Shown: positions 6,991 to 21,400 of the stretch, piece after piece
How the letters are laid out: the number at the start of each line of letters is the position of its first letter
How positions within the stretch are numbered: the stretch's first letter is position 1
From: Oikopleura dioica
Lineage: Eukaryota > Animalia > Chordata
Reading direction: 5' to 3'
Assembly: GCA_907165135.1 (NCBI GenBank)
Contig: OU015568.1
Location: forward strand, 8,494,001 to 8,558,000
DNA length: 64,000 nucleotides
Program-made: the position numbers and the translations under genes
The notes under the pieces: model-generated
Database searches by the model: none
What the model saw: the letters and a program-made list of their open reading frames with translations, nothing else
What the model was told of the DNA's origin: nothing

Positions 6991-8377
6991 ACGAAAAATG
7001 CTCATAAAAACGTTCATTTTTGATGTTCATACTTTCATGTTATTCTATTTCGTTTCCGATCGATCAAGACACAATCTAAACAGTTGGACTTCTAGCAGTG
7101 CTAATTAAGAAGAAAGCTCAACTCACACGAATACAGCGTGATGGATAGGCTCCATCAAATGAGAGCTCGTCTGCGGTGGAAAAATCCGCGACTTTGTTTG
7201 CGCAATACGATGGAACGTACTCAATAAATTACCCCCTCTGATTTGACCTGATTGTCCTTCCATAAAGGGACGAAAAGTATGAAATTTCCAATTCATCTCG
7301 GATCGTCTCCTTACTACTTTATTTGAGTAAGTCCGCCGGACTCGTAGTATTTGCTCAGAAGAGCTCGGAATGCTTTTTATGGCTGTCATACAAAATCGCC
7401 AACGAGAGTTTGCTGAAAAGCATACTTAAAATTTCGCAAAAGTTTTAATACTAGCTGTTTCTTCTTTGAGCCCACCGAAAAGGACGAAGGTAGAGAGAGA
7501 GAAGGTGGTGGAAAAAACGAGCAGCGGCGCTCTAGGCACACAGGGAGAACGACTGGAGGAGGCCACTACTGGAGCGTGTGCCTAACCAAGGAGTAGCACA
7601 ACAAAAGCTGAGCGCTACTAGCCCCATCACTCTTCTGAAACATCGTTGTGTTTACAGTGCTGAAAGAAGTTAGAGAGTACTGAGAAGAGAGAGAGACGAA
7701 TAAAACTCCCACGAAAGAGAGAAGGCCACAAGACAGAGTACTGATCGAGCAACACCTTCGCATGTCGGCTAACTGGATAACTGGGGAGTGAAAAGCGAGC
7801 TTCACATGAAACAGTTATGTTCATAGAAAGAAGACTCTGGGGACATCTTTTGCTTCTTTCGCTAAGGGTCACTATTTCACAAAAAATGCTAGTTTGATGA
7901 AACTTTGTAAATGACGTAATAGACGTTTGATCTTGACATTAGACAATAATTGTGCTAGAATCAGAAGGAGTGGTACTTGAGTCGAGAACAAGCACACTTG
8001 AAAGGGCCGTGACGCGGCGGTAACAACTGTAATCGACATTTGGAAAGTCAATTCCAAATTGAACAATTGTTCGTGCAAAAGGTCGATGGGTATAATTGCC
8101 CTTGGCCCTGAGCCATAAGCCCGATTGAAATATTAGTTGATTTTCGGTCATGGGCTCTAATTTATGGGCGTAGCGGGACATCCCACATGTAGCTAGTACA
8201 ACTAGTGATCCAAGAAAAAGGTAACTATCTCGGCCAGATACACGAATAGCCGACAAGTCAACAACTTCGGATCTGCAGTTCGGCAACCAAGAAAGTCTTC
8301 GTGTGCTAAAAGCGATGGGAAAAGTAAAGGCTCAGAGGTATTGAATTTCCATCCGGCGAATAAACTCTAAAATAATC

Positions 8378-9117
8378 ATGGTTCAGAGGCCCCATGATAA
8401 ACCATTCAAGCCGTATTCTAACGACACGAATTTCGACGAATTCCTAGACCTCAGCAGTCCAGTAACTTCATTGACAAGACGAAGAAAAAGGGACTTGGAC
8501 TGGTTCTCACTTGCATCCGGGCTTCCACAGTCAGATACATTTTACACGCCTTGGATAAAAGAGGTTGAAATGACATTTTAAAACAAGAAAATGAGTGATT
8601 GTTTAAGAAATGTTACAGAACGATGATTGACTTTGGCAAGAATCTCGCAAATAATGCTGACTCACTTGCAGAATGCTTGGGTTTTAAATTAGAAGCTGAA
8701 CCTCTTTATATTCCAAAGGTAGAAGGGGTTAACAATCAAGGAGGATCTAAACAAGAATGTAGCCTAAAATCGTCATTGTAAAAACTTGGGAAGAGGAAAA
8801 GAAGAAGAAGAGAAAGCAAAAATATCGAAAAAAGAGAAGTCTTTATTTTCAACGATCATGTCATAGACACAGAGTTCATGCAGAAGGTAAGCTAGAAAAT
8901 TCATGTTACGGGTGAAAATATTATTTAAGGGCGTGCGATTGATTTACAAATAAATTGGCTAACGGATGAAAGAATAATGAGCAAGATCGAAAACGCTGGT
9001 AAACGCGAACAACTATTCCGAAACCTGCAAAAACTGGCAGAGCAGAGCTTCGATTTCGTAAAAATTATTCGATCTTCATCGAAACCTACAGTGCTCCACG
9101 TGTCCTGCACAGGTTAA
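8378..9117 (+). CDS. hh: Highly divergent hedgehog-like protein (Hedge signalling domain; no Hint/Hog domain seen)
   Basis: Introns 8564-8607, 8719-8762 and 8887-8929 (44, 44 and 43 nt, all GT-AG) splice to WIKE|KCYRTM...|PKIVIVKTWEEE...RVHAE|GRAIDLQI...LQKLAEQSFDFV...VLHVSCTG. This matches Shh TQ|RCKDKL..KLRVTEGWDED..LHYEGRAVD..LARLAVEAGFDWV..HIHCSV. The N-terminal exons are unresolved (one probably ends at 8337). Confidence 0.72.
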
Positions 9118-9603
9118 ACTGCAAACTTGCCCAGTACAAAATTGGTCGGAACCGGTGAAATCTAAGCAAACATGTAAAAAAGAATAAAAAAACGAAACCT
9201 AGCGATAACCTTTTCGCTAATTTTTGACTGCCGTATATTTGTAAAGTAAGGTTTTCATTTCATTGAGTGTTCTCAATCACTCGGCACTAGAACTATTCCT
9301 ACTCGTATTCATTTCTTCTCACTTCCCAAAACTGAGTATCCTGATACTCCTCGTTGTTCTCAAAGTCTTTTCTCTCTCCATGTTTATACTCACACTCGCT
9401 ACAGTACATAAAATAAACTAATTCGAAAACTAGAGCTCTGTACATCGGCTTCTATATTTACAGTAACAGGTAGACCAAACGGTAAAGTGTATACAAATAC
9501 AGTAAATAGCAGTAGTTGAGGTAGTTGAAACGCCGGAGGAAAAGCAGTGAACTTTGACTATTTATTTTTCAAGGAATGCGACCTTCTGGAGCTCCATTCT
9601 CCA

Positions 9604-12600
9604 TCACGATAAGCTGGACTCGGAAGTACTAAAAGATTTTTTAATGCTTGATTATAAATGAGCGGCACAGCGACTGTATAATCGATCCTCACCTCAGATC
9701 TCGATCCAGCGAGCTAGAAGTGGCCTCCAAAGGTGGCTCAACAAGATGGAGCGTTTTCTTTGGAGTCACTATCAGCGAATTAAGCACTTTGCGGTCGTCT
9801 TCGCTGAGGTTGATGTTGAATATTTGGTGGCTGACTTTCGCGGCAAAATCGAAAGAGATGACAACTTTTTCTGATCCGATCAAGTGCGCGACCAAGGAGG
9901 AGTTCAACATTGCAACTAGTACGCCGAATGAAAGAGGAGCTCCAAAATAGCTACGAATTTCATTAGAAAAATCGAGAAAAATGAGGGATGTACCTTGAAA
10001 TTGCCGAAAATGGCGAGCAGAGGAGAAAAATCAGCGGACAAAAACAAACAAGAGCCAGGCCAAGTTGAATTTGCGGGGTGTTGATTAATGGAACGTCGAC
10101 TTTGTTCAAGGACAAGAACACCGCCGGGTATAATGAGGCCAGCAAGCACCCAGCCAGAGTGAGCTGATTGAAGGGGATATTACAGAATGAAGTGAGCCCA
10201 ACGACTTGAAATAACGAGACAATCCAAACCGCAACCTACGATAGTTGTCGAAATAAATTACAGTCAGATTCTTTCGCTAATTTGATTTATAATCAACGGG
10301 CTAATAACTCACCGATAGAAACGAGAACATCATATCTGCATGTATAAGACCACCTAAAAACACGCCAAGAATGACGAAGCCGGCATAGGCGGCGATAGTA
10401 GATGGATCGGTCACGTTCTGTAGATATCCGAGCGCGTCGATTTCTGCTCCAGTGAGTTTTGCGTGCTTCATTTCGATAGAGATTCTCTGAAAATAGGAGT
10501 GTCAAAAGTTTTCTCAAATAAAATATGACTTACTTCTTGGAAATCTTTAAAGTCATCCATTTTCAAGCCAAAATCGTTAACAACTAATCGCACAGGCAGT
10601 TTGAGCATTTTCTTCGCATTTCTTTGAAACGGCCTGTAGTCGAGCATTTTATTGAGAGCAGTGGTAGGGCAGTTCTTTAACTTTTCAAGCGGCATCATTG
10701 TGTTTTTCTTCTTGCTGATGATTTCGGAGTAAGACGGAATCCAGCCAAATATTTCAAACTCTGTTTTCAATCTCAATTCGGCGCGGTTCAGATAAATCCA
10801 GGTTGCCAAAAGCGTCTCGTACTCTCCAGATTGGCGATCGAACGTCTTCTCCCTTCTTCCAGTTTTGTTGATAGCGTAGATTAGAATTCTCTCAATGGAC
10901 TCAGTAATATCTGATGCTTTCAAATCTCGACGGACATCTTTCTTTCTTAGACGGTTGACTGCAGCTCTGCATTCCCATTCCGTCACGTCTTCAACGCGGA
11001 CCTTTTCGTCGACCCAGGTCTTGAAGTTGTAAAACCAGAACTCTTTGTCGATCGACATTGATTGATGGAACTGACTTGATGAAGCGATTCGATGAGCATT
11101 CGCCAATTCATCGTGTAAATCGGTCGTTTCGTTGACATCGAGTTCCAGCATCGTTTTATGGACCGGAAAGTACGTTTCTATGAAGACTTGAGAATTTCAT
11201 CAAAATATAAAATCGATTTTTTGGAGAATATGTTCCATTTTAAAGATTCTCTTGAGATTCAAGCCTTTCCTTGGATACGCGCCGCAACATAATTGTGAGA
11301 TGTCTTCGGAATGAAATCGAAATTGCGGACAGAGATGTCGAATCGAAGCGCCAGACCGACTGCAGCCAGGATCGTTATCGAAACAGCAAGGACCACTCTC
11401 ACCGCCGCCCATAATAGCGTGCAGTAGAATTTCGCCCTGTGTGGCAGCATTATTTCTCTAAGATTCCTTTAGCTTCTGCCAGTCAAAAGAAGATATACCT
11501 GGTTCGATTGGACATGTATTTCGAGAGGCGGTGGACCTCGAAGACTTTCGGGACGATGCAAATGATGAAGAACATGAAGAAAATCGACATGATCAAGAAT
11601 TCACTTCCAAAATGCTCGAGCGTCGTGTTAGTTTTCGTCCAGTAAACTAATCCAAGCCCGAAAAGAGAGGACATCGATAAAACGATGGTTGGAAAGGTGT
11701 GGATGAAGATTTCTCCCATAGAAGTGGTATTTTTAGCTCGATACAGGTGACCAAATGTCGCAACGACTCCTAGGATGAGACCACCTGCGATAGATTGAAG
11801 AAGCGGACCACCAACATGCGAGATAAATGGGTCCAATTTCGCCTCAGCGTGAGTTTTCGCCTAAAGAATGATAATGATTTTGGCAATTAGCGAATTTCAA
11901 TGGTATGGGAGCACAATTATTGCACTAGGACTCACAGAAAGCGCGTAGTTGATGATGATGGAGGACCACCCTGTTGTAAAAGATCCAAAAACAAAGAAAT
12001 TCGAAATGGCGAAAATAGCGCTTAACAGAAGAGGGTGACTTAGCCCGGAAACAGCGACGATAAAGTAGACAATCCCGGTTGAAACCATCAAATATGGGGT
12101 CACCGCCAAAAAGCTAGAGTAAAAATAAGATTCTCTCCATTCAAAATCGATATTACCTTTCTTTGATATTCAGATTTTCGAGCTGGACGAAGTTTGGACA
12201 GTAGAAAAACGCATTTTCGTGAGATTCAACCACATTTTCTACATTGTTGAGGAAAGTTTCCAAAAGTTCTGCAGCGAGTTCGGGCGTCCAGAAAACTAAT
12301 GACTTGATGATTAACTCAAAGAGGAATTTATTACCTTGTCGTCCTGCGGAATTTCTCTTCAAGGGCTGATTGCTGAGCGTGTTTGAGTAGAAGTCGTAGA
12401 GAGAGTTTGCCGCCATGAGGTTAATAGTTGTTTGCAGGTATCCTTGATCGTTGATAGTTCTTTCCGTTGAATGAGAGATTCCAACGCTATTGCATGAACT
12501 TGACGATGAGATTCTACGAGATGTCAAGAGCGAATCGTTATCTTCGAAATACTCGTCGATAGAAATCTTTCTCGAGAAGTCAGAGAGGCCTGATAATGAG

Positions 12601-13674
12601 GAGTATCCACAAGGAGTGTCATCAGCCCAAGAAAATTTTCCATCGGTGCCAAGGCAATATTTTTCTCTGTTGTATATCAAAAGATCTTCGCCTTCACTGA
12701 AACAATTGAGGGGCGTGTCGACAATGCATGGAGCCAAATCGTTCTGAAAAAACTGGGAAAATTCGGTATCCAGCTTCGTTGTGAGTTCAATGTCTTCGCT
12801 CAATTTGAAACCAGTTGCTTTGTGACAGAGGCTCTCGATTGTCCATGTTCTTTGCCATTAACATGAGTTGCATTAAAAACTTTAAGATTTACCTTTCAAA
12901 AAAGGAAACAGATGTAGCAAGAACAGCTTGAACCACGGCTTGATGATGTAAAAGTGCCGACTTTGTAATGCCTTCTCTCGAATCGTCCGCATGTGTCATC
13001 ACATTCAGCATAAAATTACCCCACGTTGCGTTGACCCCTGAAATTGACGTGTGGTTCGACTTCCTGTGCTAAGGATCCTTCACTTGACACCTACTGTATT
13101 TAGGAAGGGCCTACTGAAGCCATGATCAAGCCTATTTCTACAGTACTTTCTTCATAACGCAAAATGCATCTCACCTGGGTTAACTTTTTGTTGCCTCGAG
13201 TAGACTATCAATTCGTCATTCTCACAGTACGTTATTGCGACGAGCCCGATTAGGAATGAGAATATGAAGAATACAGAAAACGAGGACTGCCTTTCGATCA
13301 AACTGCCAAGGCGGTACAGAAACTTGTGCCATTGATGCTTCACATCGTACTTTAATCTTCTCTTTTTTGGCTGAGGGATGAGGCACTAGAAAGTTGATAG
13401 AAAAAATTGATCTTATAATACTACATAGGAAATAAATATAGCGAGTAAATACTTTTTCGGAGTTATTTTGCACCAGACTTCGAGAACTATCTTCACATGT
13501 ATATTCAGAATCTGTCTCTGGCATCGTGTCACTGTCGCACCGCGGATAGTCACTGATTCTATCAGTCTCTCTCACACGCTCTTCTCTAGTACGTAAGTCT
13601 TCCTTGCGATTACTCGCATTCTCCTCTATGTTTGCAGTTTTCTCCCCTTCGTTTAGGGGGACTGTTTGGGTCAT
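9604..13674 (-). CDS. ptch: Divergent Patched-family 12-TM Hedgehog receptor
   Basis: Motifs colinear with PTCH1: KFLYRLGSLIERQ (LLFKLGCYIQKN), ITKSALLHH (LTTEALLQH), RTWTIESLCHKA (RQWKLEHLCYKS), PCIVDTPLNCFSEG (PCLIITPLDCFWEG), DFIPKTS (DIVPRET), FWFYNFKTWV (MWLHYFRDWL), LLATW (YLTAW), and IRSYFG..LVAMLNS (TM12). Two TM clusters (11260-12110 and 9880-10420). Confidence 0.88.
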
Positions 13675-13715
13675 CTTTGTTGAGGGGCTATGTCTAAACT
13701 GGCGTTATTTCTCGA

Positions 13716-14308
13716 GACCACACGGCCCCACTGGGTGGCAGATTACCACCCAACAGCGTAAAATGGATATTTGCACTTGGTCCTCTCTCTCGTCCGGGGT
13801 GGGCCGGTGATCTTCTCTGTTTTTCCCGTATTTCACCGCACTGGCTTTTTGTCCACTTGGTGGTGAAAATGATTGAGTAGCGCTGGACAAATTCAAAAGA
13901 GGAAAATCTAGCGCGAAATCTCTCAGAGGGCGACGGATGAACCACAAAATGATGGTGCTAATCCTCCAAGTGTTAAAGTAGCTGGATCAGGGCTCAGTCA
14001 CTACGGTAGTGAAATTAATTCCGATAACGCCACCCACGGGCAGAGGAAAACGCCAGAAGAGTCACTGACCACCTACCGATTCTCTTATCTCTTCTCCCAG
14101 AAAGAAAAAAAAAACGTAAAACAAAACCCCTTTGAGAGAGAAAATGCTTGACTTACCCTGAAAGTCACAGCTGTGAGTGCGGGAAAGTGAGGGTAACGCT
14201 CGACATTTCTTTCGCCAGTTCAAAAAAAATCGAGAAAAGATTTCCGCTATCTATAAAGGCAGATGAGCGGATGGTGGCATCATGCCATCGACGAGAACGG
14301 GCCACCCA
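13716..14308. promoter_or_regulatory. Cluster of near-consensus Gli sites upstream of the patched-like ATG
   Basis: Compared with GACCACCCA: TACCACCCA 13744-13752, GACCACCTA 14067-14075 and GGCCACCCA 14300-14308 (1 mismatch each); GACCACACG 13716-13724, TGCCACCCA (reverse strand) 13732-13740 and CGCCACCCA 14028-14036 (2 mismatches each). Confidence 0.45.
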
Positions 14309-15432
14309 GAGAGCGCAAATTAATCAACTCTCATAAATTAATAAACTCGCTGATAAAAACACCTTTATGGAAGGAAGTAACTTAGGACTATAAAAATTTC
14401 ATCACTTCCAAAGTTTCAAGTCTCGATTTCTACATCATCACTTTCAAATTTAACAAGCGTAAAAGCGAAAAACATAGAAAATATTTCAAACGCATTTTTA
14501 CGAGTCAATCCGGCCGTCAACTTTCAAAATACTCACGTTTGACGAGTCATTTATCCTTTTCTCCATTCCCACAAGAACCGCGCTTTTTCTCAAAAGCCAA
14601 TATCAATCTGCTTACATTTCTATCTCTCCTTGTCCACAAATGTTAGAGGGAGTCAACGGTGCGAGAAATTTTGTTGATTAATCTGATTTCAATTTTACGA
14701 GCTGGTCTCTCTGTCTGAGGCAGTAGGATTTTTTTCTTTTTCAATTTGTAAAAAAAATGGATCGTCCCACGCTCGACCACCGAGTTCGGGGAGCAATTGT
14801 AAAGATTGAACATCATCAGCGTCTTTTTAGAAAGGGAAATGAACGTCAAGAGGAATTCGGTTTGCATGTTTATCGCATTCCGGAGTTGGGAAGCAATAAG
14901 TGCTCTTGGCTTTTGCGAATCCTGGTGAATTCAGTTACTTGAATTTTTTACGTAGTATTTTGCGAGATTATCAAAATTATGCGAGATTGGTAGTAGAAAT
15001 TTTGTTCCAAATATCAGTCTAACAACAATCCGTGGAGGCTGAGGTCAGGGTCGTCCTTTTGAGGTCAGTTTAGCCAATTTTTTTACTCCTAGACACACTG
15101 AAAGTGCCTACAAGCCTTATTCCGAGGCAGAGTTAGCGACGATACGTCAGTTAAAACATCGGTCCCTGCATTCCTGATCATTCTTATGGTCTGTAGCTAC
15201 AGACCTACAGACTCTGTAGTACTGCTTGTATGAAGAAAGCGTAGTTAATGAAGTTACCTTTTATTGCACATAATATTATGGGAAACAGAGTCGATCTGAT
15301 AAGGATCGTCACCGAAGTGAAGCAGAGTCGCAGACTCTGGCTGGGTCACAAGAAACTGGAACAAGAACTTGAGCAGGAGCATTGCGCCAGAAGAAATAAA
15401 GAAAAAAGAATAGTTAAAATAGTAAAAAATGG

Positions 15433-18400
15433 TTATCTAAGATCGGGTTGGCCTTTCTCGAGTTCGTCGAAAACAGAACCGGGTTCAGCCGCGCTGGATT
15501 GGAAGAATGATGAGGCTCCAGTGAACTCTGAAAAGAGATTTCAAACGCTATCGGAGGAGGGTGGCTTTTTTACCGGGAATATGAGTGGCACTAGACGTCA
15601 CGGGTAAGGGAGCTTGCGAAAGAGTCTTATTTAAATCTGCAATGACTGCAGCTAGAGAGTCGGATCCCGTCAGTGGAGGAGTTGCAGAGCTCGATTCGGA
15701 AACTGGTGGCGCAAGAATTGGTGATTCGAGCTTTGGGATTCCTTGGAGAACGCTTTGGTCGAACAATAAGTTGCCACTTGCGGGTGCGCTCTTGTTTTCT
15801 TCAAGACTGGGTGTGGAAGACGATTCTTGAGGCGTGGGCTCGACGGGCGGACTTTCAGGGCTGGCAACTGTTGGTTCAACTTCGATTGGTTTCGCTTCAA
15901 CAGGGTTTTGCTGGACCTCTGGAGTCGGAGAAGCGACTGGAGAGGCCGCAGCGGGGATCGGGGATGTAACCACAGGTCTTAAGAAATAATAGAACTTGAG
16001 GTTGAAAGAAGCTTACTGTTGATCCGCGAGCATTGGCGCAGCAGCTGCGTAAAGGGGATTAGCAGCGATTCCAATGGTCGTTCCCATGTTATCAGCAGCT
16101 TGGTTCATCGTCAATAAATTTTGATGAGTCATACCAGGAGCTCTTTCAAGTTCTGGAACTGCTGGTGGCATGAGGTGCTCTGGTTGTTGCGTTTCTAAAA
16201 ATAAAATTTGATGAAATGAATGTTTTTGAGGAAATCTACCTTTGAAAAGCTCCTGCTTGAGATTTGGCAGAAAAACGTCGATTCTGTCCCAAGTGACTTG
16301 CCACAGATCGGTGTAACCAGTGTCAGGATTGTGAAAGATTCCAGCGGTATCCATCACCAGAAGCATGTTCTTCAAGCTTTCAGGAATCGCCTCGCACTGG
16401 GAAAAAGATAAAAAAATGCCTCCGAAAAACAGCATACCAGTAAATCTCGATTACCAACGCGCATGTATTTGTCCATAAAGTCTAAAATGGTGAGCCAGCA
16501 TGCTTTGAATGTCGGAGAGGTAAGCAGATCCTTCAGATGTTGAAGAAAGACCTTCGACAAAAGTGAAGCAGCGCGCATTCTGGTCTCGTCCATTGAATTT
16601 GGGTCATGTGGTGAAATGTTTTCTGATTTGTTTTCGTCAGTTATTGACAAAAGAAAAATCTTACCTAATAATCTAGTGAGCAAGGGGAAGAGAACTTTGT
16701 GGAAGCACGCTTCCCATTGAGTGCCATCGAGAACTTGAAGATCTTGAACAAGCAGCGCACTTGATAGGCAATTGAATGCATGCGTTCGGATTCCACGTCG
16801 AATATCGCAGCACATACGGGCGATTCCCTAGAAAAAGATGATTCTAACCCAAGAAGACTGGTAGAAAGCAAACCTCGAGTAGCGGGCACCAACCAGCCTC
16901 CCACAAGTTGTTAATGTCGATTGAATCTTCATTCCAACTTCTGAAAATTCGCCCTGCTCTGGTATGAAGAGTCTGTAGCAACTCAAGAAGTTGCATTGAG
17001 ACTTTTTGATAGTCCTCAGTTGAGGCGGATTCCGTCGTCTTTTCAGATGTGCTACGCTTTCTTCGACTTCGTGATGACTTTTTCGAAGGTGTAAGGTTCT
17101 TGTTTACACCGTTTATCGAAGCTATAAAAATGTGAGAAAGAAAAAAAAGATAAAATGATTGTACCTTCAACAAACGCTCGAATTGTATCGACACAAATTT
17201 CAAAGTTTGCTGGTGTTATATGCGCGGTATCTCGGACGAGGAAAGCAAGGGATTCTGTGGCTCGGATAAGAGCCCTTGGATCATGTGGGCCGACTTCAGT
17301 GTGATAGGCGAGTGAGAACTCATTCTGCCCCTCGGTTGATTCCTAAAGTTTTTGTTTTATAAAATCGGTGCTAAACTTTGAAGTTTGTGAGTGATTAATG
17401 TAAGATGATTTGAAATCTGTTGCTGATTGTTTGATTATCGTATTTGTGAGTTTTAGTAAAATCGACTTGAATCAAGAGGATGCAATTTTTTGAAGAACCC
17501 ATGCGACATTAACGCTTACTTTGTGGAGGCTTTTTTGGCGTACTACTCCGTTCTAAATTTATACTAAGTTTTAGAGCAAATGGGAGACAGAAACAAAGAA
17601 ATTGATTTTGAAATATTACAAAGTAAATTTCAGAATCGCCTGTTCTAAATCCTGCATGCACCCTATGGCGACGCTATTTTTACTATTCAACAGGTAAGAG
17701 AGTAATATATGGCCTCATTACCAATCTGATTGTAGCTTCCGCAGGAGCGTCGTTATCACTTGTGTAGCCGCGATCAGACACGTTGCCTCCTTCAGATTCA
17801 TTATCTGACATCCCCGAAGCTTGGCTCAGGTCTGCTTCAGATCCAGCCCGCGAGTTGTTCAAACTTCGCTGCTCCGCTCCTTCCTCTTCTCCTTGATTTT
17901 CTTCCGCCTTCTCTTTCTTCGATTCAAGCAGCAAACCTGCTCCAGCCGTCTTCAAAAGAAGGAAAATAGTGAACCAGTCTTCTGAGGAATGAATATCCGC
18001 GCCACATTTTTGCAAAAGCTCGTGGAGTCCATAGGCAATTTGTCTGTACAGACGAGGGATGATCTTCGGGCAGACGAGGAGGATGATTTGAAGGGAGTTA
18101 AGGACGGGTTGTTGAAGGTCTTCTCGATGGAGAAGTCGGATGGCCAGTCGAAGAAGTCCCGTGACAGCGCGTTCAAGTAGGAAAGTATGCTCGGTAGCGG
18201 ACGAAATGATGTCAACGAGATGCTGTCTAACCTGGCCCCAGAAGCTCAGAATACGATCTCTATTCTGCACAACGATGCGGAAGAGAACTTCAAGATAGAA
18301 CACTGCAGACTCTTCCGAGTAGTGCGTACCCAATGACTCATGCGTTTCCGCACTGCGCGACGCAATAATGAGCGTTTTCACAAGCTCGTGCAGCGAGTCT

Positions 18401-21400
18401 AGCCGAAGGAATTTGGACTCAGTCACGATGTTTTCGGGCTGAAGTTCAATAACGAACTCTCTTGCGAGTTTTAGAGCAGCGTCAGATTCTGACTTAGCGC
18501 CACCTTCTGCGCCACCTGTGAACATTGAATAAAAGGATGAAAAGACACCGCCGCCTTCTTTTTGTGGCACTTTCGCTTCGTCCCGAACGAGTAAGATTTG
18601 CCCGTCAACAAAGTCTTCTCCGTGAGCCATGTCCTCCGGGAGTAAGTTGCTGCGGAAGAGAGGCAACAACAGATCAAGAATATTTCGCCATCCCTCTCTG
18701 ATAATATCGCCATGCCGATTCGACAAGGTGAAAACTGCCCGAGCAGCTAATCTCGCCTTCGAATTCGTTCCCAGCGATGTAGAGACAATTTCCAGGGCCT
18801 CTGCAGAGGTCGAAAGTTGCGTTTTCTTACAGAGAGTGATGATCAAATTGTCGAAAACGTCGGATTTTCCATAATATGCACTGATTTTTGCGCACTTGCG
18901 GAACCCAGCCACGGCTCGTTGAATGATCGACGGATCGTTTGACCTGTCGAATGCGAAGCCAAGAGCGTGAACAGTCGGCCCCCAAGTAATTTCGAAAAGT
19001 TCAGAGTCGTACATTTGCGGCTTAGGAACTTGAATGTAGATTCCTTCTGGCAATTTTGAGCGCTGCTGGATGGTTGACCAGATCCAGTCGTCTTTTAGTG
19101 AGCCTTTTTGCTCTTCGGCGAGGACGATTTCGTTGTCTCTAATGTTGTTGAAGATCGCTTCGAGCATGTCCTGATCAAAGTCTTTATCGCCGTCGCAACC
19201 GCGAACATTCGACTTGAAGTTTTGAACTTTCATCGGCTCCGCGTTTTTCGCTACGTTCGCATTATGCTGATCTGTGTTCAACATAATCACTGCATAAGCT
19301 AAAACAACGACAGAATCATCATTATGGAAGCAGTTGCCATTAGCTTCATGCCAAGGTCTGGCAAAAGCCTCGAGCAGTCGCTGAATAACTGGTGCTTCGC
19401 CAGGTAATCGGAAAGTATTCAAAAAGCTTCTCAGGCCTTCATCGATCCTCTGGCCGGTAAAATCGAACGTGTCCAAAAACGCCGTCAAGAGTTCACCCGC
19501 GTGCCGACCGGAGATGAATTCCCCAATCTCTTTCTTGCTCAAAGCAGGATTCGTCCGCAACCACTTGGCAATCGCTGGCCAATCTTTTGAACCCATGAGG
19601 CCTTGTTCTTCCAAAAACGCGATGCCCTTCTTCGGCTTTTGATTGAAAAGCTCTGTGCCAGCTGCGAAGAGTTTCTTCTTTTGCTTGATGATCAGAATTT
19701 CCTCGACAGAGGGCTGGTTTGATGAAAATCTTGGAGGAGCACGAGTGCTTACTCGAATTGATCTTGGCGGATTAGATGATTGCTTCTTGAAAGTTTTTTT
19801 CGCGATCATAATTCCACTGTCCAAATTGTACGGGCTAGTGTTCTTTTCCGTGTTACCGTCGGTCTTGCTGTCGGAATTACAGTTTTCCTCGATTGAATCG
19901 ACAAGTGCACAGAGGCCATCAAGACTGATTAGGTTCGTTGAAAGCATGATGTTTCCACTGGTGAACGCTTGTTTTGACAAAAGCTTCATCGTATCTTCGT
20001 ACAAATTACTGCAGTGGCTGTCGCAGTCGTAGTTGAGATAGAGTTCTGTTGCCATTCCAGGCAGATGGAAGAACTGGACAAGACTGTCAAGGATAACCTC
20101 GCGCAGCTCGTAAGAATAGTTGGGGTTTTTGGTGTCTTTGACGATCTCCAACATTCGTTTGAGATATTCCTCGAGCTGATACTTCAGATGAGGCCTCAGA
20201 GCTTCGAAAAGCAGGAGAGATACGCGAAGAGACGAAGCTACCAAAGAAAGCTTATCACATGAGAGCATTTGATACAAATGCTTCGAGATATCATTTTGAA
20301 CGATTTCCAAGAGCTCTGGAATTTCAGAAATGTCATCGCGAGCGACTTCAAGAGCAACCATGATCAAGGAAAGGCCGGTTTTGATCATCAAGTCGGGATT
20401 TTGCCGCTCATGTTGGTCGATGAGCGAGGCGAGAAAAGTGAAAAGGTCGACGACAAGTGGCAAACCATATGGTCTGCTTTCTTCCGTTTCGTCTTCTAGG
20501 AGCGCGCTTGACTCGACGATGACAGGATCGTCTTCTGGATTCGCCATGCCGACCTCAGCAGTGGACATGTTATAGTCCCGGACGACAGGGTCTTCTGTCG
20601 CTTCTTCAGCAGTTTCAATCGCGTTGTCATCGCCTTCTTCTGTCTCATTTAGCTGATCATGACTCTCTTCTTCGATCGACTCTTGTGGCGGCTCCAATGA
20701 CTCGGCAACTGGGGTCTTTACTGGCTCCTCAAGAGCTTCTTCAGGGCTAGAAGCAGCCGTGAGGGAAGATTTTGAACTCAGGCGAGAACGTCTTTCGGAA
20801 ACCCTACGCTTTCCTTTGAATAGTTCGTTCATCCAAATTCCCTTTCTTTTAGCATCTACCCTAGCATCGATGCTCTCCCCTTGTAATTATCCAGTCGAGA
20901 GAACAGAAGCTGAACAACATCGACAAGCGTATGCTCCGCTGTTTTACGTAGCAGTTCAGAGAAAACCATTTGGAAGCAAATTCTGAAACAGGATACCATG
21001 ATTTCTCTGACAGTTTCGTTCGTCAAAAGCTGTCCGATTGGGGTGAGAACAAGAGTTCGAAGGACTTGAATAATCTTCATCAAAACAACTTCATCGTTTG
21101 CAGGAACAGTTCCGCGAAAACGCGCTCTCGTCACACTTTCAGCCAGCCTTTCGACCACTTCAGAACTCTGCGGATGAGCAGGATCGATCAATCCATACGA
21201 GAGAAACTTATTGACGGTGCTAAGAGCGAGACCAGTAATTGGCCCGAGCAAGTCTTCACTTTGGATGACTTCGAAGAACGGAACAAGATAGTCCAGTGGC
21301 TGGATTTCGGATAGGTCTTGGGCTTGATTCAGTTTTAATTTGAGCTCCTGGAATATCTGGATCTGGGGATCTTCGTCCACCTGGGGATCGTGCGAGTCCC

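What the first reader, a model, noticed from the sequence alone, without database searches (positions are those of the whole stretch)
8378..9117. Cryptic, highly divergent hedgehog-like gene that ends without a Hint/Hog domain
The gene is invisible in the ORF track because the diagnostic exons are short or absent from it. After splicing, it keeps the three zinc-site residues of the Hedge fold (H-AEGRAI-D and L-H-VS; Shh H140, D147, H182) and W-E-E-E (Shh WDED). It has a phase-0 intron just before (K/R)C, the position I recall for SHH intron 1 (Q100|R101 C102; needs verification). It lacks the Glu equivalent to Shh E176 and has a very basic insertion (KKKKRKQKYRKKR) that could bind heparan sulfate or be cleaved by furin; there is also an upstream RRRKR. 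The frame stops right after the domain (TAA at 9115, or ANM* if 9113-9166 is spliced), and no Hint-like exon is evident before the convergent patched gene. Inference: a ligand with no autoprocessing or cholesterol modification.
Basis: partly seen in the sequence, partly recalled or inferred. Interest (0 to 1): 0.82.

Follow-up and report, generated by a model that had tools for sequence, protein, structure and literature searches.

The report
Secreted hedgehog-like protein lacking Hint
A real, expressed gene of the tunicate Oikopleura dioica, an animal reported to have lost hedgehog, encodes a small secreted, very basic protein that keeps the zinc-binding signature and one intron position of the hedgehog signalling domain but has no self-cleaving half; the kinship is plausible, not proven.

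Summary
The gene is real. It is Oikopleura dioica OKI2018_I69 gene g10799 (P0001). It is single copy. RNA contigs from a marine metatranscriptome confirm three of its introns.

The gene starts upstream, with a signal-peptide exon at 7817 that both NCBI gene models miss.

Relatives were found only in O. dioica lineages and marine metagenomes. They are only 42-57% identical. Three blocks are invariant in the copies that cover them: QRSC, VHAEGRAIDLQI and FDFVKI...LHVSC. That includes an H-x6-D...H zinc triad.

Standard tests fail. Pfam, PDB profile searches and Foldseek find nothing, and the AlphaFold models are poor (pLDDT 53-55).

Weaker evidence points to the hedgehog/DD-peptidase (LAS) fold:
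- hhalign against real hedgehog exon 2 gives probability 68% and P 5e-5, but most of the score is the 10-residue motif.
- All ten ESM-Atlas structural neighbours with a family label carry families of that fold.
- ShhN and fly Hh are in the top 50 of 48,161 chains for both models.
- The phase-0 intron before K-C matches the conserved hedgehog intron 1 exactly.

No Hint exon follows the gene. The "patched" neighbour is not supported.

My odds: derived hedgehog N-domain 0.42, other LAS origin 0.30, unrelated orphan 0.24. The scan also holds a first-reader note on this window (s1-357649).

The parts
7817..7867 (+). Exon 1: start codon and signal peptide (MFIERRLWGHLLLLS-LR). The 3' end is either 7861 or 7867; both are in frame.
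   Evidence: tblastn of P0007 residues 1-18 matches here. Orthologue proteins P0007 and P0008 carry the same N-terminus contiguous with the rest of the protein. Reads of runs X6-X8 (Norwegian-type strain) cover 7738-7871 and continue after 7861 with a 30-mer that is the start of the next exon in L007. Inferred for this strain; the NCBI model P0001 does not use it.
7868..8220 (+). Intron 1 (353 nt, GT..AG if the donor is at 7868).
   Evidence: Inferred from reading frame and homology. Not covered by RNA of this strain.
8221..8337 (+). Exon 2: basic, poorly conserved N-terminal part (VTISARYTNSRQ...KGSE).
   Evidence: The 3' end 8337 is fixed by the X1 RNA contig joint. The contig covers 8260-8337. 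The 5' end is inferred from the AG at 8219-8220 and by homology with the Norwegian exon at L007:9879.
8338..8386 (+). Intron 2 (49 nt, GT..AG).
   Evidence: RNA contig joint 8335>8385, cut +2.
8387..8563 (+). Exon 3: contains RRRKR, a possible proprotein-convertase site; ends ...TPWIKE.
   Evidence: X1 RNA contig covers 8385-8517. Identical to P0001 residues 36-94. Orthologues have KRK or SKR at the same place.
8564..8607 (+). Intron 3 (44 nt, GT..AG, phase 0), directly before K-C. Same place and phase as the conserved hedgehog intron 1.
   Evidence: Used in P0001. Present at the same site in the Norwegian genome, FLKK|DC. 20 of 21 hedgehog loci have a phase-0 acceptor directly before R/S-C/L. 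No RNA of this strain covers it.
8608..8718 (+). Exon 4: KCYRTMIDFGK...LAECLG..., predicted helix 1 plus a short helix.
   Evidence: P0001 residues 95-131. AF2 secondary structure. Cys96 and Cys117 are kept in all four copies that cover them.
8719..8762 (+). Intron 4 (44 nt, GT..AG, phase 0).
   Evidence: RNA contig joint 8716>8761, cut +2. Same site in the Norwegian genome.
8763..8886 (+). Exon 5: beta strand IVIVK-TWEEE, polybasic insertion, QRSCHRHR-VHAE-G (first zinc His, H170).
   Evidence: X1 RNA contig covers it. The block QRSC..VHAEG is invariant in all five copies that cover it. hhalign pairs PKPKIVIVKTWEEE with hedgehog PGVKLRVTEAWDED.
8887..8929 (+). Intron 5 (43 nt, GT..AG, phase 1, inside the Gly codon of EGR).
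   Evidence: RNA contig joint 8883>8927, cut +3. Same site in the Norwegian genome.
8930..9117 (+). Exon 6: RAIDLQI (zinc Asp D177), two helices, FDFVKI strand, LHVSC (zinc His H229), TAA stop at 9115-9117.
   Evidence: X1 RNA contig covers 8927-8965. P0001 residues 173-234. Invariant columns listed.
9183..9188 (+). AATAAA, the likely poly(A) signal about 70 nt after the stop. It leaves no room for a Hint exon before the convergent gene.
   Evidence: Read from the sequence. Inference.

Best explanation
The locus is a six-exon, expressed, single-copy Oikopleura dioica gene. It encodes a secreted, very basic protein of about 255 aa (pI about 9.8).

Its C-terminal part of about 140 residues most likely adopts the hedgehog/DD-peptidase (LAS) zinc fold. 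I read it as a fast-evolving remnant of the hedgehog N-terminal (Hedge) domain, corresponding to hedgehog exons 1-2, that has lost the Hint/Hog half.

What the sequence shows:
- The zinc triad H170-x6-D177...H229 is invariant.
- The catalytic-type residues are absent: the first His of H-x-H and the Glu six residues upstream.
- There is no Cys after the signal peptide and no Gly-Cys-Phe/Hint.

What I infer:
- It is not autoprocessed, not cholesterol-modified and not palmitoylated in the hedgehog manner.
- It is probably not a peptidase.
- It works as a soluble extracellular zinc-dependent binding protein. The conserved polybasic loop, inserted between the W-E-E strand and the zinc motif, would hold it on polyanions such as heparan-sulfate-like matrix. 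A dibasic or furin-type site upstream may release the domain.

Shown: the gene, most of its splicing, the secretion signal by homology and cDNA of a sister lineage, motif conservation, and absence of Hint. Inferred: the fold, the hedgehog ancestry and the binding role.
For: - Gene and splicing.
- Single copy in the genome.
- Signal peptide.
- The longest invariant block of the family is the zinc motif VHAEGRAIDLQI, next to hedgehog LHYEGRAVDITT, and FDFVKI and LHVSC are also invariant.
- A targeted HMM of 39 real hedgehog exon-2 peptides gives single-comparison P 3e-5 to 4e-4 for all four orthologues. Fully shuffled decoys never reach those scores (0 of 2000 each).
- hhalign of the family against hedgehog exon 2: probability 67.8%, P 4.9e-5, 58 collinear columns in three blocks.
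- hhalign against full Hedge domains: probability 58.8%.
- hhalign against actinobacterial proteins that carry the identical 9-mer: 33%, 21 columns.
- ESM Atlas: all ten structural neighbour rows have TM 0.50-0.56. Every row with a family label carries HH_signal, Peptidase_M15_3, Extensin-like_C or DUF5715; the rest are unnamed phage or bacterial clusters.
- VIA-align: ShhN (Z 4.8, 18-21% identity), a second ShhN chain (Z 4.7) and fly Hh (Z 4.2-4.6) are within the top 50 of 48,161 chains for both independent models, with the highest sequence identities in the lists.
- The phase-0 intron directly before K-C equals hedgehog intron 1 and is conserved in the Norwegian lineage.
- The protein ends 5-7 residues after the last His, about where hedgehog exon 2 ends.
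- The literature reports no hedgehog in O. dioica (PMC3034685, PMC8704543), and no other HH_signal candidate was found in the genome.
- SUFU is still present.
Against: - Pfam gives no HH_signal or M15 hit, exon by exon or for the whole database protein.
- phmmer and profile searches of the PDB never reach Shh.
- Foldseek against PDB and BFVD finds nothing, as does the Atlas shape search with my own model.
- The AF2 models are of low confidence: pLDDT 53 and 55.5.
- The VIA Z values lie in the noise band; the top hits are unrelated alpha/beta sandwiches.
- With the 10-residue motif held fixed and the flanks shuffled, the similarity to hedgehog is not significant: 11 of 160 for hhalign and p 0.07-0.26 for HMMER.
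- The exact hedgehog 9-mer also occurs in bacterial and phage-like proteins that are not hedgehog.
- The nearest clusters by language-model features are phage proteins. 'Protein hedgehog' is only rank 64.
- One orthologue weakly hits a phage endolysin family (E 0.003).
- Nothing in the N-terminal 90 residues aligns with the exon-1 part of Hedge.
- Orthologues between O. dioica lineages are only 42-57% identical, which is unlike a morphogen.
- No canonical Patched was detected.
Confidence: 0.42

Rival explanations
1. It is a LAS / Peptidase_MD-fold protein that does not descend from hedgehog. It could be an old animal LAS gene or a bacterial or phage cell-wall peptidase domain captured by horizontal transfer, as proposed for tunicate rusticalin-like proteins. 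It then gained introns, a signal peptide and a polybasic loop. It would act on or bind bacterial cell walls, in feeding or defence, with or without residual peptidase activity.
For: - The motif H-x-EGRA-V/I-D is shared by non-hedgehog bacterial and phage-like proteins.
- The nearest clusters by language-model features are small phage proteins and Peptidase_M15_3 (score 0.93).
- P0006 hits PHROG 894 'endolysin' at E 0.003.
- Flanking similarity to hedgehog is not significant.
- Fast evolution, high charge and secretion suit an immune or digestive effector.
- Horizontal transfer of an MD peptidase into tunicates has been proposed before (PMC6339383).
- O. dioica carries such a gene at C5:1124064.
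Against: - It is not close to the rusticalin-like gene: BLASTP finds nothing and hhalign gives probability 0.8%.
- No M15 Pfam hit. No hit at E<=1 for Peptidase_M15_3 in a six-frame search of the genome.
- tblastn against 50,697 phage records finds no LAS match.
- The catalytic His of H-x-H and the Glu are missing in all orthologues, so enzyme activity is unlikely.
- The W-E-E block and the FDFV strand are hedgehog-subfamily features.
- One of only five introns sits exactly at hedgehog intron 1. My rough estimate for a chance match, from five introns in about 765 coding positions, is about 1%.
Confidence: 0.3
2. It is a lineage-specific orphan secreted basic protein with no evolutionary link to the LAS fold. 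The 8-of-10 match to the zinc motif and the other short matches are chance, picked out by a reader looking for famous motifs. The structure-based hints follow from that motif.
For: - All standard homology tests are negative.
- The models are of low confidence.
- The Atlas shape search with my AF2 model gives unrelated folds at TM<0.4.
- The VIA Z values are no higher than for unrelated sandwiches.
- The family has no relatives outside O. dioica-like sequences.
Against: - The motif is the longest invariant block in a family that otherwise changes at about half of its positions.
- The three putative ligands have the right order and lie in the predicted strand elements.
- The order helix-strand-strand-helix-strand-strand fits the fold.
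- Every Atlas structural neighbour with a family label carries a family of one small clan.
- Three hedgehog chains recur in the top 50 of 48,161 for two models.
- Fully shuffled decoys never reach the observed HMM or hhalign scores.
- The intron coincidence.
Confidence: 0.24
3. It is not a functional protein-coding gene: a transcribed pseudogene or a mis-annotated non-coding locus.
For: - Expression looks low: two small contigs in X1 and a few dozen reads in X6-X8.
- The NCBI models differ at the 5' end.
Against: - The open frame is kept across six exons in at least four divergent lineages, with four conserved cysteines, invariant blocks and three conserved intron sites.
- Spliced poly(A) RNA exists.
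Confidence: 0.03

Closest known systems
Hedgehog N-terminal signalling (Hedge) domain, Pfam PF01085 (Shh, Ihh, Dhh, Drosophila Hh)
   Same: - Secreted.
- H-x-EGRA-V/I-D plus a C-terminal His in a strand (zinc triad).
- A strand followed by W and acidic residues.
- An F-D-W/F-V strand.
- A phase-0 intron directly before (K/R)-C.
- The domain ends at about the place of the hedgehog exon 2/3 boundary.
   Different: - Does not score with the family HMM.
- About 15-20% identity at most.
- Insertions of about 15 and about 20 residues, the second polybasic.
- No Glu or His catalytic-type residues.
- No N-terminal Cys after the signal peptide.
- The exon-1 part cannot be aligned.
- No Hint domain, so no cholesterol.
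- Evolves very fast.
Bacterial hedgehog-like M15A proteins (Hh/DD-peptidase family; Roelink, PMC6027127). Examples fetched here: L051 and L080.
   Same: A Hedge-type domain that ends right after the last His strand, with no Hint. It stands alone at the C-terminus of a secreted protein.
   Different: The bacterial proteins score 146-182 bits with HH_signal and keep H-x-H. The Oikopleura family scores nothing and lacks the first His.
Rusticalin-like proteins of tunicates, amphioxus, coral and placozoans (PMC6339383)
   Same: A secreted tunicate protein with a Peptidase_MD-clan domain. O. dioica has members.
   Different: Rusticalin-like proteins have two Cys-rich repeats, an acidic to neutral pI, conserved catalytic residues and clear VanY/M15 similarity. 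The O. dioica copy at C5:1124064 shows no relationship beyond the H..G.A.D motif.
Nematode hedgehog-related genes (warthog, groundhog, quahog) and other Hog/Hint-only genes
   Same: They are a precedent for uncoupling the two halves of hedgehog in a fast-evolving lineage.
   Different: They are the mirror image. Nematodes keep Hint with new N-domains and lose Hedge. Here a Hedge-like part would be kept without Hint.

Membership tests
Hedgehog N-terminal signalling domain (PF01085 HH_signal) | Scores above the Pfam gathering threshold (22.1 bits) | tested here: not met
   No family at E<=10 for single exons or for P0001, P0002 and P0003. The six-frame genome search gave no candidate. Positive controls: hedgehog exon 2 alone scores 161 bits, bacterial Hh-like proteins 146-182 bits.
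Hedgehog N-terminal signalling domain (PF01085 HH_signal) | Zinc triad H-x6-D ... H in the conserved sequence context (HYEGRAVD; H-C-S) | tested here: met
   VHAEGRAID and LHVS are invariant in all five sequences that cover them. hhalign pairs them with the hedgehog motifs.
Hedgehog N-terminal signalling domain (PF01085 HH_signal) | Residues equivalent to Shh E176/E177 and H134/H135, and the first His of H-x-H | tested here: not met
   The position two residues before the last His is V or L. The position six residues before is S, G or K. No His lies six residues before H170; Cys164 is there. The Shh numbering comes from my own knowledge.
Hedgehog N-terminal signalling domain (PF01085 HH_signal) | Calcium-site acidic cluster (strand-G-W-D-E-D plus acidic residues of the exon-1 part) | tested here: inconclusive
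   T/S-W-E-E-E/Y is present in three of four orthologues, and L-E-E-Y in P0005. hhalign pairs it with AWDED. The exon-1 acidic residues cannot be aligned.
Hedgehog N-terminal signalling domain (PF01085 HH_signal) | Hedgehog/DD-peptidase alpha/beta sandwich fold | tested here: inconclusive
   AF2 pLDDT is 53 and 55.5. Foldseek finds nothing. VIA gives ShhN Z 4.8 and fly Hh Z 4.2-4.6 in the top 50 of 48,161 chains, twice. Atlas neighbours at TM 0.50-0.56 all carry families of this fold where labelled, but the Atlas shape search with my own model was negative.
Hedgehog N-terminal signalling domain (PF01085 HH_signal) | Conserved phase-0 intron directly before R-C/L at the start of helix 1 | tested here: met
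   Window intron 8564-8607 ends ...ttaag|AAA TGT. 20 of 21 hedgehog loci have the same arrangement. The same site is used in the Norwegian genome.
Full-length hedgehog (Hedge + Hint) | C-terminal Hint/Hog module with a Gly-Cys-Phe cleavage site | tested here: not met
   Stop at 9115-9117 and AATAAA at 9183. Orthologues end at the same place. The only Hint-like match in the genome is weak and on another contig.
Full-length hedgehog (Hedge + Hint) | Cys as first residue after the signal peptide (palmitoylation site) | tested here: not met
   After the hydrophobic core come VTISARY (this strain) or TVTAAATN / FTITAAPTN (others). There is no Cys. The cleavage site itself was not predicted with a dedicated tool.
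LAS / Peptidase_MD clan enzymes (M15 families, VanY, M15_3, M15_4) | Match to any family HMM of the clan | tested here: not met
   Pfam finds none. In PHROGs only P0006 hits endolysin phrog_894, at E 0.003 and 17.6 bits. No hit at E<=1 for PF08291 in a six-frame search of the genome.
LAS / Peptidase_MD clan enzymes (M15 families, VanY, M15_3, M15_4) | H-x(3-6)-D and H-x-H with a catalytic His, Glu or Asp | tested here: inconclusive
   The metal ligands are present, but the catalytic His of H-x-H is absent in all orthologues.
Rusticalin-like proteins | Two Cys-rich N-terminal repeats plus a VanY-like C-domain | tested here: not met
   The protein has 4-5 Cys only and no repeats. There is no similarity to the O. 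dioica M15_4 gene.
Patched / RND sterol-sensing family (the convergent neighbour, not the finding itself) | Match to the Patched (PF02460) or Sterol-sensing (PF12349) HMMs | tested here: not met
   No hit on any ORF of the neighbour in the window or in the Norwegian orthologue. The genome-wide hits are two NPC1-like loci elsewhere. The Atlas search was negative.

The most novel reading that the evidence does not exclude
The ancestral chordate hedgehog gene was taken apart in Oikopleura. The Hedge half would survive as this fast-evolving, lipid-free, secreted zinc-binding protein on the PAR chromosome. A Hint-like module would survive in a separate gene on another chromosome (C2, about 4.786 Mb). 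The Hedge-like protein would signal through a non-canonical partner, possibly the equally fast-evolving multi-pass membrane protein encoded tail-to-tail next to it in both the Okinawan and the Norwegian lineage. This would happen in a genome that keeps SUFU but has no recognisable Patched.
Probability: 0.1. Interest if true: 0.88.

Novelty: new variant of a known kind. Interest (0 to 1): 0.6.

Why it matters
Oikopleura dioica is cited as the tunicate, and one of the few chordates, without hedgehog (PMC3034685, PMC8704543).

If this protein is a derived Hedge domain:
- Hedgehog was not simply lost. It was stripped of autoprocessing and lipid anchors and freed to evolve fast.
- It would be a natural experiment on what the Hedge zinc site does without Hint, cholesterol, palmitate or a canonical Patched.

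If instead it is a captured or ancient LAS domain, it adds a second, catalytically degenerate MD-clan protein to tunicates.

Either way:
- It gives a fold and testable residues (H170, D177, H229) to an unannotated orphan family.
- It corrects two public gene models that miss the signal peptide.

Tried and rejected
- Exon-by-exon Pfam and PDB searches: nothing, or chance hits only.
- Whole database protein against Pfam, PDB and PHROGs: nothing, apart from one weak endolysin hit for one orthologue.
- The family profile against the PDB gave 3-hydroxyacyl-CoA dehydrogenase at E 6e-4. I rejected it because the two matched stretches are in the wrong order.
- The core-only profile found nothing.
- Foldseek against PDB and BFVD, and the Atlas shape search with my model, gave no usable match.
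- tblastn against phage genomes found no LAS hit.
- A second copy was suggested at C2:12745715. It is a coiled-coil protein, so I rejected it.
- A close relationship to the O. dioica rusticalin-like M15_4 gene: rejected.
- The neighbour as Patched: no support.
- I considered the two sterol-sensing loci of the genome as Patched. Both are NPC1-like.
- Extending the hedgehog alignment into the N-terminal 90 residues: no signal.
- I looked for a Hedge-like exon upstream of the Hint-like ORF on C2: none within about 3.5 kb.
- The Hint-like ORF against the PDB gave only spurious TAL-repeat hits.

The joined form used is the database entry P0001. The 255-aa model that includes exon 1 was never searched or folded.
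Full report
ORGANISM AND GENE MODEL

The window is C1:8494001-8558000 of a 64.28-Mb, 19-contig assembly. A phmmer search with the last exon found a 234-aa database protein, P0001, that is identical over that exon. NCBI names it Oidioi.mRNA.OKI2018_I69.PAR.g10799.t1 of Oikopleura dioica. From residue 3 onward P0001 reads exactly like the exons 8238-8337, 8387-8563, 8608-8718, 8763-8886 and 8930-9114.

Contigs of a poly(A) marine-plankton metatranscriptome (run X1, 99-100% alike) show three joints:
- 8337|8387 (49 nt)
- 8718|8763 (44 nt)
- 8886|8930 (43 nt)

The intron 8564-8607 is not covered by RNA of this strain. It is used in P0001 and sits at the same site in the Norwegian genome. It is also spliced out in P0002, a protein from a short JGI contig that reads like a transcript. 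The gene is single copy.

All quoted motifs are present at the stated places. The stop at 9115-9117 is the annotated one, and orthologues end at the same point.

The ATG at 8378 is wrong. It lies inside the intron 8338-8386 that the RNA contig skips.

Orthologue proteins P0007 and P0008 begin with a hydrophobic signal-type N-terminus that is contiguous with the rest of the protein. tblastn places the equivalent exon at 7817-7867 of the window (MFIERRLWGHLLLLS-LR).

Reads of three O. dioica RNA runs (X6-X8, 90-95% alike, so another lineage) cover 7738-7871. After 7861 they continue with a 30-mer. That 30-mer is found exactly at L007:9879, the start of the next exon in the Norwegian genome. Splicing of the signal-peptide exon onto the body of the gene is therefore shown for the sister lineage and inferred for this one.

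Both NCBI models (P0001 and P0006) miss this exon. The full model is six exons and about 255 codons: 7817-7867 (or -7861), 8221-8337, 8387-8563, 8608-8718, 8763-8886 and 8930-9117.

THE FAMILY

Sequence searches find relatives only in O. dioica records and marine metagenome or Logan contigs. The fuller-length ones are 42-57% identical to P0001, and two N-terminal fragments (P0007, P0009) are only 28%.

P0006 is the Norwegian orthologue. It lies in the same gene order: this gene, then a convergent gene for an 1103-aa membrane protein, then the Sec7/GBF1 gene.

Despite the divergence, these features are kept in every copy that covers them:
- the blocks QRSC.R..VHAEGRAIDLQI.W.TD, FDFVKI and KP..LHVSC
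- four cysteines
- a polybasic insertion

The proteins have pI 9.7-9.9.

IS IT A HEDGE DOMAIN? SEQUENCE TESTS

Pfam gives nothing at E<=10 for single exons or for the whole proteins. phmmer and two family profiles do not reach Shh in the PDB.

To make a fair targeted test I fetched real hedgehog DNA with a degenerate pattern for HYEGRAVDI from metagenome contigs. This gave:
- 39 distinct animal hedgehog exon-2 peptides
- one complete intronless hedgehog (L022)
- two bacterial Hh-like proteins (L051, L080)
- 32 loci (27 of them listed here) with actinobacterial-type and a few phage-like proteins that carry the same 9-mer

Pfam confirms these identities and serves as a positive control: exon 2 alone scores 161 bits.

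An HMM of the 39 peptides gives the four orthologues single-comparison P values of 3e-5 to 4e-4. Across the Pfam library that would correspond to E about 1-10, which agrees with the negative Pfam scan.

hhalign results:
- Family against hedgehog exon 2: probability 67.8%, P 4.9e-5, 58 columns in three collinear blocks. The blocks are PKPKIVIVKTWEEE with PGVKLRVTEAWDED, VHAEGRAIDLQI with LHYEGRAVDITT, and LAEQSFDFVKII with LAVEAGFDWVYYE.
- Family against full Hedge domains: probability 58.8%.
- Family against the actinobacterial proteins with the same 9-mer: probability 33%, 21 columns.

Null tests:
- With all columns shuffled, the mean score is 11.3 and the maximum 18.7, against 31.4 observed.
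- With the 10-residue motif kept and only the flanks shuffled, 11 of 160 shuffles reach the observed hhalign score.
- The HMMER equivalent gives p 0.07-0.26.

So the motif is far beyond chance for this composition. What surrounds it adds only weak support for hedgehog specifically. The motif itself is not exclusive to hedgehog.

STRUCTURE

Two AlphaFold2 runs on shallow alignments gave pLDDT 53.2 and 55.5. One used P0001:60-234 and the other the Norwegian P0006:36-198. Both predict the same order of elements: helix, helix, strand, insertion, strand, helix, helix, strand, strand.

Foldseek finds nothing in the PDB or BFVD. The Atlas shape search with my second model returns unrelated folds at TM<0.4.

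VIA-align against 48,161 chain representatives gave these rows within the top 50 for both models:
- ShhN 7e2i_G (Z 4.8, rmsd 3.6-4.2, 93-94 aligned, 18-21% identity)
- ShhN 6rmg_B (Z 4.7)
- Drosophila Hh 2ibg_E (Z 4.2-4.6)
- the LAS carboxypeptidase DacB 4nt9_B (Z 4.0-4.4)

The hedgehog chains have the highest sequence identities in the lists. However, all Z values are within the tool's stated noise band, and the top rows are unrelated sandwiches.

The ESM Atlas holds P0001. Its own model (pLDDT 0.53) has ten neighbour rows at TM 0.50-0.56. Every row with a family label carries HH_signal, Peptidase_M15_3, Extensin-like_C or DUF5715. That includes chordate and arthropod hedgehog clusters. The remaining rows are unnamed phage or bacterial clusters.

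By language-model features the nearest clusters are small phage proteins and M15_3 (0.93), with 'Protein hedgehog' at rank 64 (0.89). The same tool returned nothing patched-like for the neighbouring gene, so it does not simply echo expectations.

I rate the hedgehog/DD-peptidase fold at about 0.75.

GENE-STRUCTURE EVIDENCE

In 20 of 21 hedgehog loci from diverse animals, a polypyrimidine tract and AG directly precede the codon of R/S in R-C/L-K-E/D-K-L. This is a phase-0 intron.

The window has ...tgtttaag|AAA TGT TAC, a phase-0 intron directly before K-C, at the predicted start of helix 1. The Norwegian gene has it too, as FLKK|DC.

With five introns in about 765 coding positions, I estimate an exact chance coincidence at about 1%. 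This is my estimate, and it depends on accepting the Cys as the anchor.

The other two introns inside the domain have no hedgehog counterpart. By my knowledge of the genome paper, this fits the known intron turnover of this species.

The protein ends five residues after the last His in the Okinawan copy and seven in the others. Hedgehog exon 2 ends five residues and one base after it. Stand-alone bacterial domains end similarly, so this does not discriminate.

HINT AND PATHWAY GENES

No Hint exon can follow the gene. The stop is at 9115 and AATAAA at 9183, and then the convergent gene begins.

Genome-wide, the Hint HMM finds one weak match on another contig, C2:4786209-4786451 (16.9-19.1 bits, E 0.001-0.12). 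Its sequence reads ...GDEVLS...IRLTPDHLVYV. A neighbouring ORF reads ...APITENANILAGGTAASV, which aligns collinearly with the Hint of L022. I take it as a probable divergent Hint module. No Hedge-like exon lies within about 3.5 kb upstream of it.

SUFU is present. The only two Patched/sterol-sensing loci found are both NPC1-like. I did not test Smoothened, Dispatched, HHAT or Gli.

THE NEIGHBOUR

The convergent gene (about 9250-13950, minus strand) encodes a multi-pass membrane protein. The order of its hydrophobic and loop-sized ORFs resembles the RND/Patched layout (my reading).

No ORF of it, in this strain or in the Norwegian orthologue, matches Patched, Sterol-sensing or any other informative Pfam family. 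The Atlas gives nothing. The Norwegian product carries a precomputed label, PF27572 'TRA2_N', a family absent from the library here. 'Patched' is therefore unsupported.

HOW IT MOST LIKELY WORKS

Shown:
- It is a secreted protein.
- It has an invariant H-x6-D...H triad and four conserved cysteines.
- It has a conserved polybasic loop and a di- or polybasic site upstream of the domain.
- It has no Hint and no N-terminal Cys.

Inferred:
- It binds zinc in a hedgehog-like pseudo-active site but is not a peptidase, because the first His of H-x-H and the Glu are missing in all lineages.
- It carries no cholesterol or palmitate, so it is soluble.
- The polybasic loop tethers it to polyanions.
- The zinc groove serves as a binding surface. 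By my knowledge of published Shh complexes, this is how Shh binds Hhip and Patched.

Its rapid divergence argues against a classical morphogen and for a derived role.

VERDICT

My odds:
- hedgehog-derived: 0.42
- LAS fold of other origin: 0.30
- unrelated orphan: 0.24
- not a functional gene: 0.03

LIMITS

- The family alignment is very shallow (Neff about 1.4).
- The fold evidence is not independent of the motif.
- The joined form used is the database entry P0001, and the 255-aa model with exon 1 was not searched or folded.

Noticed in passing
G000:C2:4786034-4786683 (minus strand; L001, L094): A probable divergent Hint/Hog module in three adjacent ORFs. The middle one scores Pfam Hint at 19 bits (E 0.001). 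A downstream ORF, APITENANILAGGTAASV, aligns collinearly with the Hint of a real hedgehog (L022). No Hedge-like exon lies within about 3.5 kb upstream. O. dioica may keep a Hint gene although hedgehog is reported absent.
   Followed up: partly
window about 9250-13950, minus strand; orthologue L007:11184-15207: A convergent multi-pass membrane-protein gene (1103 aa in the Norwegian model). Its ORF order resembles the RND/Patched layout, but it has no Patched or Sterol-sensing hit in either lineage. It carries a precomputed label 'TRA2_N' (PF27572), a family not in the local library. The gene order (this gene, the membrane protein, Sec7/GBF1) is conserved between the Okinawan and Norwegian genomes.
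   Followed up: partly
window 7817-7915 and L007:9441-9975: Both public gene models miss the signal-peptide exon. P0001 starts with a 5-nt coding exon (ATGAC at 7911-7915), and P0006 starts at an internal Met.
   Followed up: yes
L007:9534|9879 (equivalent to window 7861|8221): The cDNA junction in the Norwegian-type runs reads ...CTTTCG|TTTACT. On the genome this implies a non-canonical intron (TT..AG, or GT..AA if shifted by one base). It is seen in 35 reads over three runs.
   Followed up: partly
window 9078-9345: Reads of X6-X8 (90-95% alike) pile up here with a 98-nt 'joint' 9179>9278 (AA..AT) and loose ends on both sides. This may be the diverged 3' UTRs of the two convergent genes in the other lineage, or a repeat. 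Unexplained.
   Followed up: no
G000:C4:10409000-10416000 (L092) and C1:4212000-4219000 (L093): The only two Patched/sterol-sensing loci found in the genome are both NPC1-like (E 1e-61 and 1e-73 to human NPC1). No canonical Patched was detected. SUFU is present at C4:10259059-10259382.
   Followed up: partly
G000:C5:1124064-1124171 (L008:1372-1866, minus strand): A Peptidase_M15_4 hit in an ORF with the motif SNHLVGHAIDFNL. It is probably the O. dioica rusticalin-like gene of PMC6339383. It is unrelated to the finding beyond the metal motif.
   Followed up: partly
L010, L011, L014, L018 and about 25 more metagenome loci; also L057: Actinobacterial-type proteins (...GSAHYEGRAVDIFVRP...) and a phage-like protein carry the exact hedgehog 9-mer HYEGRAVDI. 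The two that were scanned (L010, L057) match no Pfam family at E 0.01. The motif is wider than the HH_signal family.
   Followed up: partly
window 14600-20832, minus strand: A GBF1-type Sec7 guanine-nucleotide exchange factor gene (Sec7 214 bits, HUS domain, TPR_28). Ordinary.
   Followed up: yes
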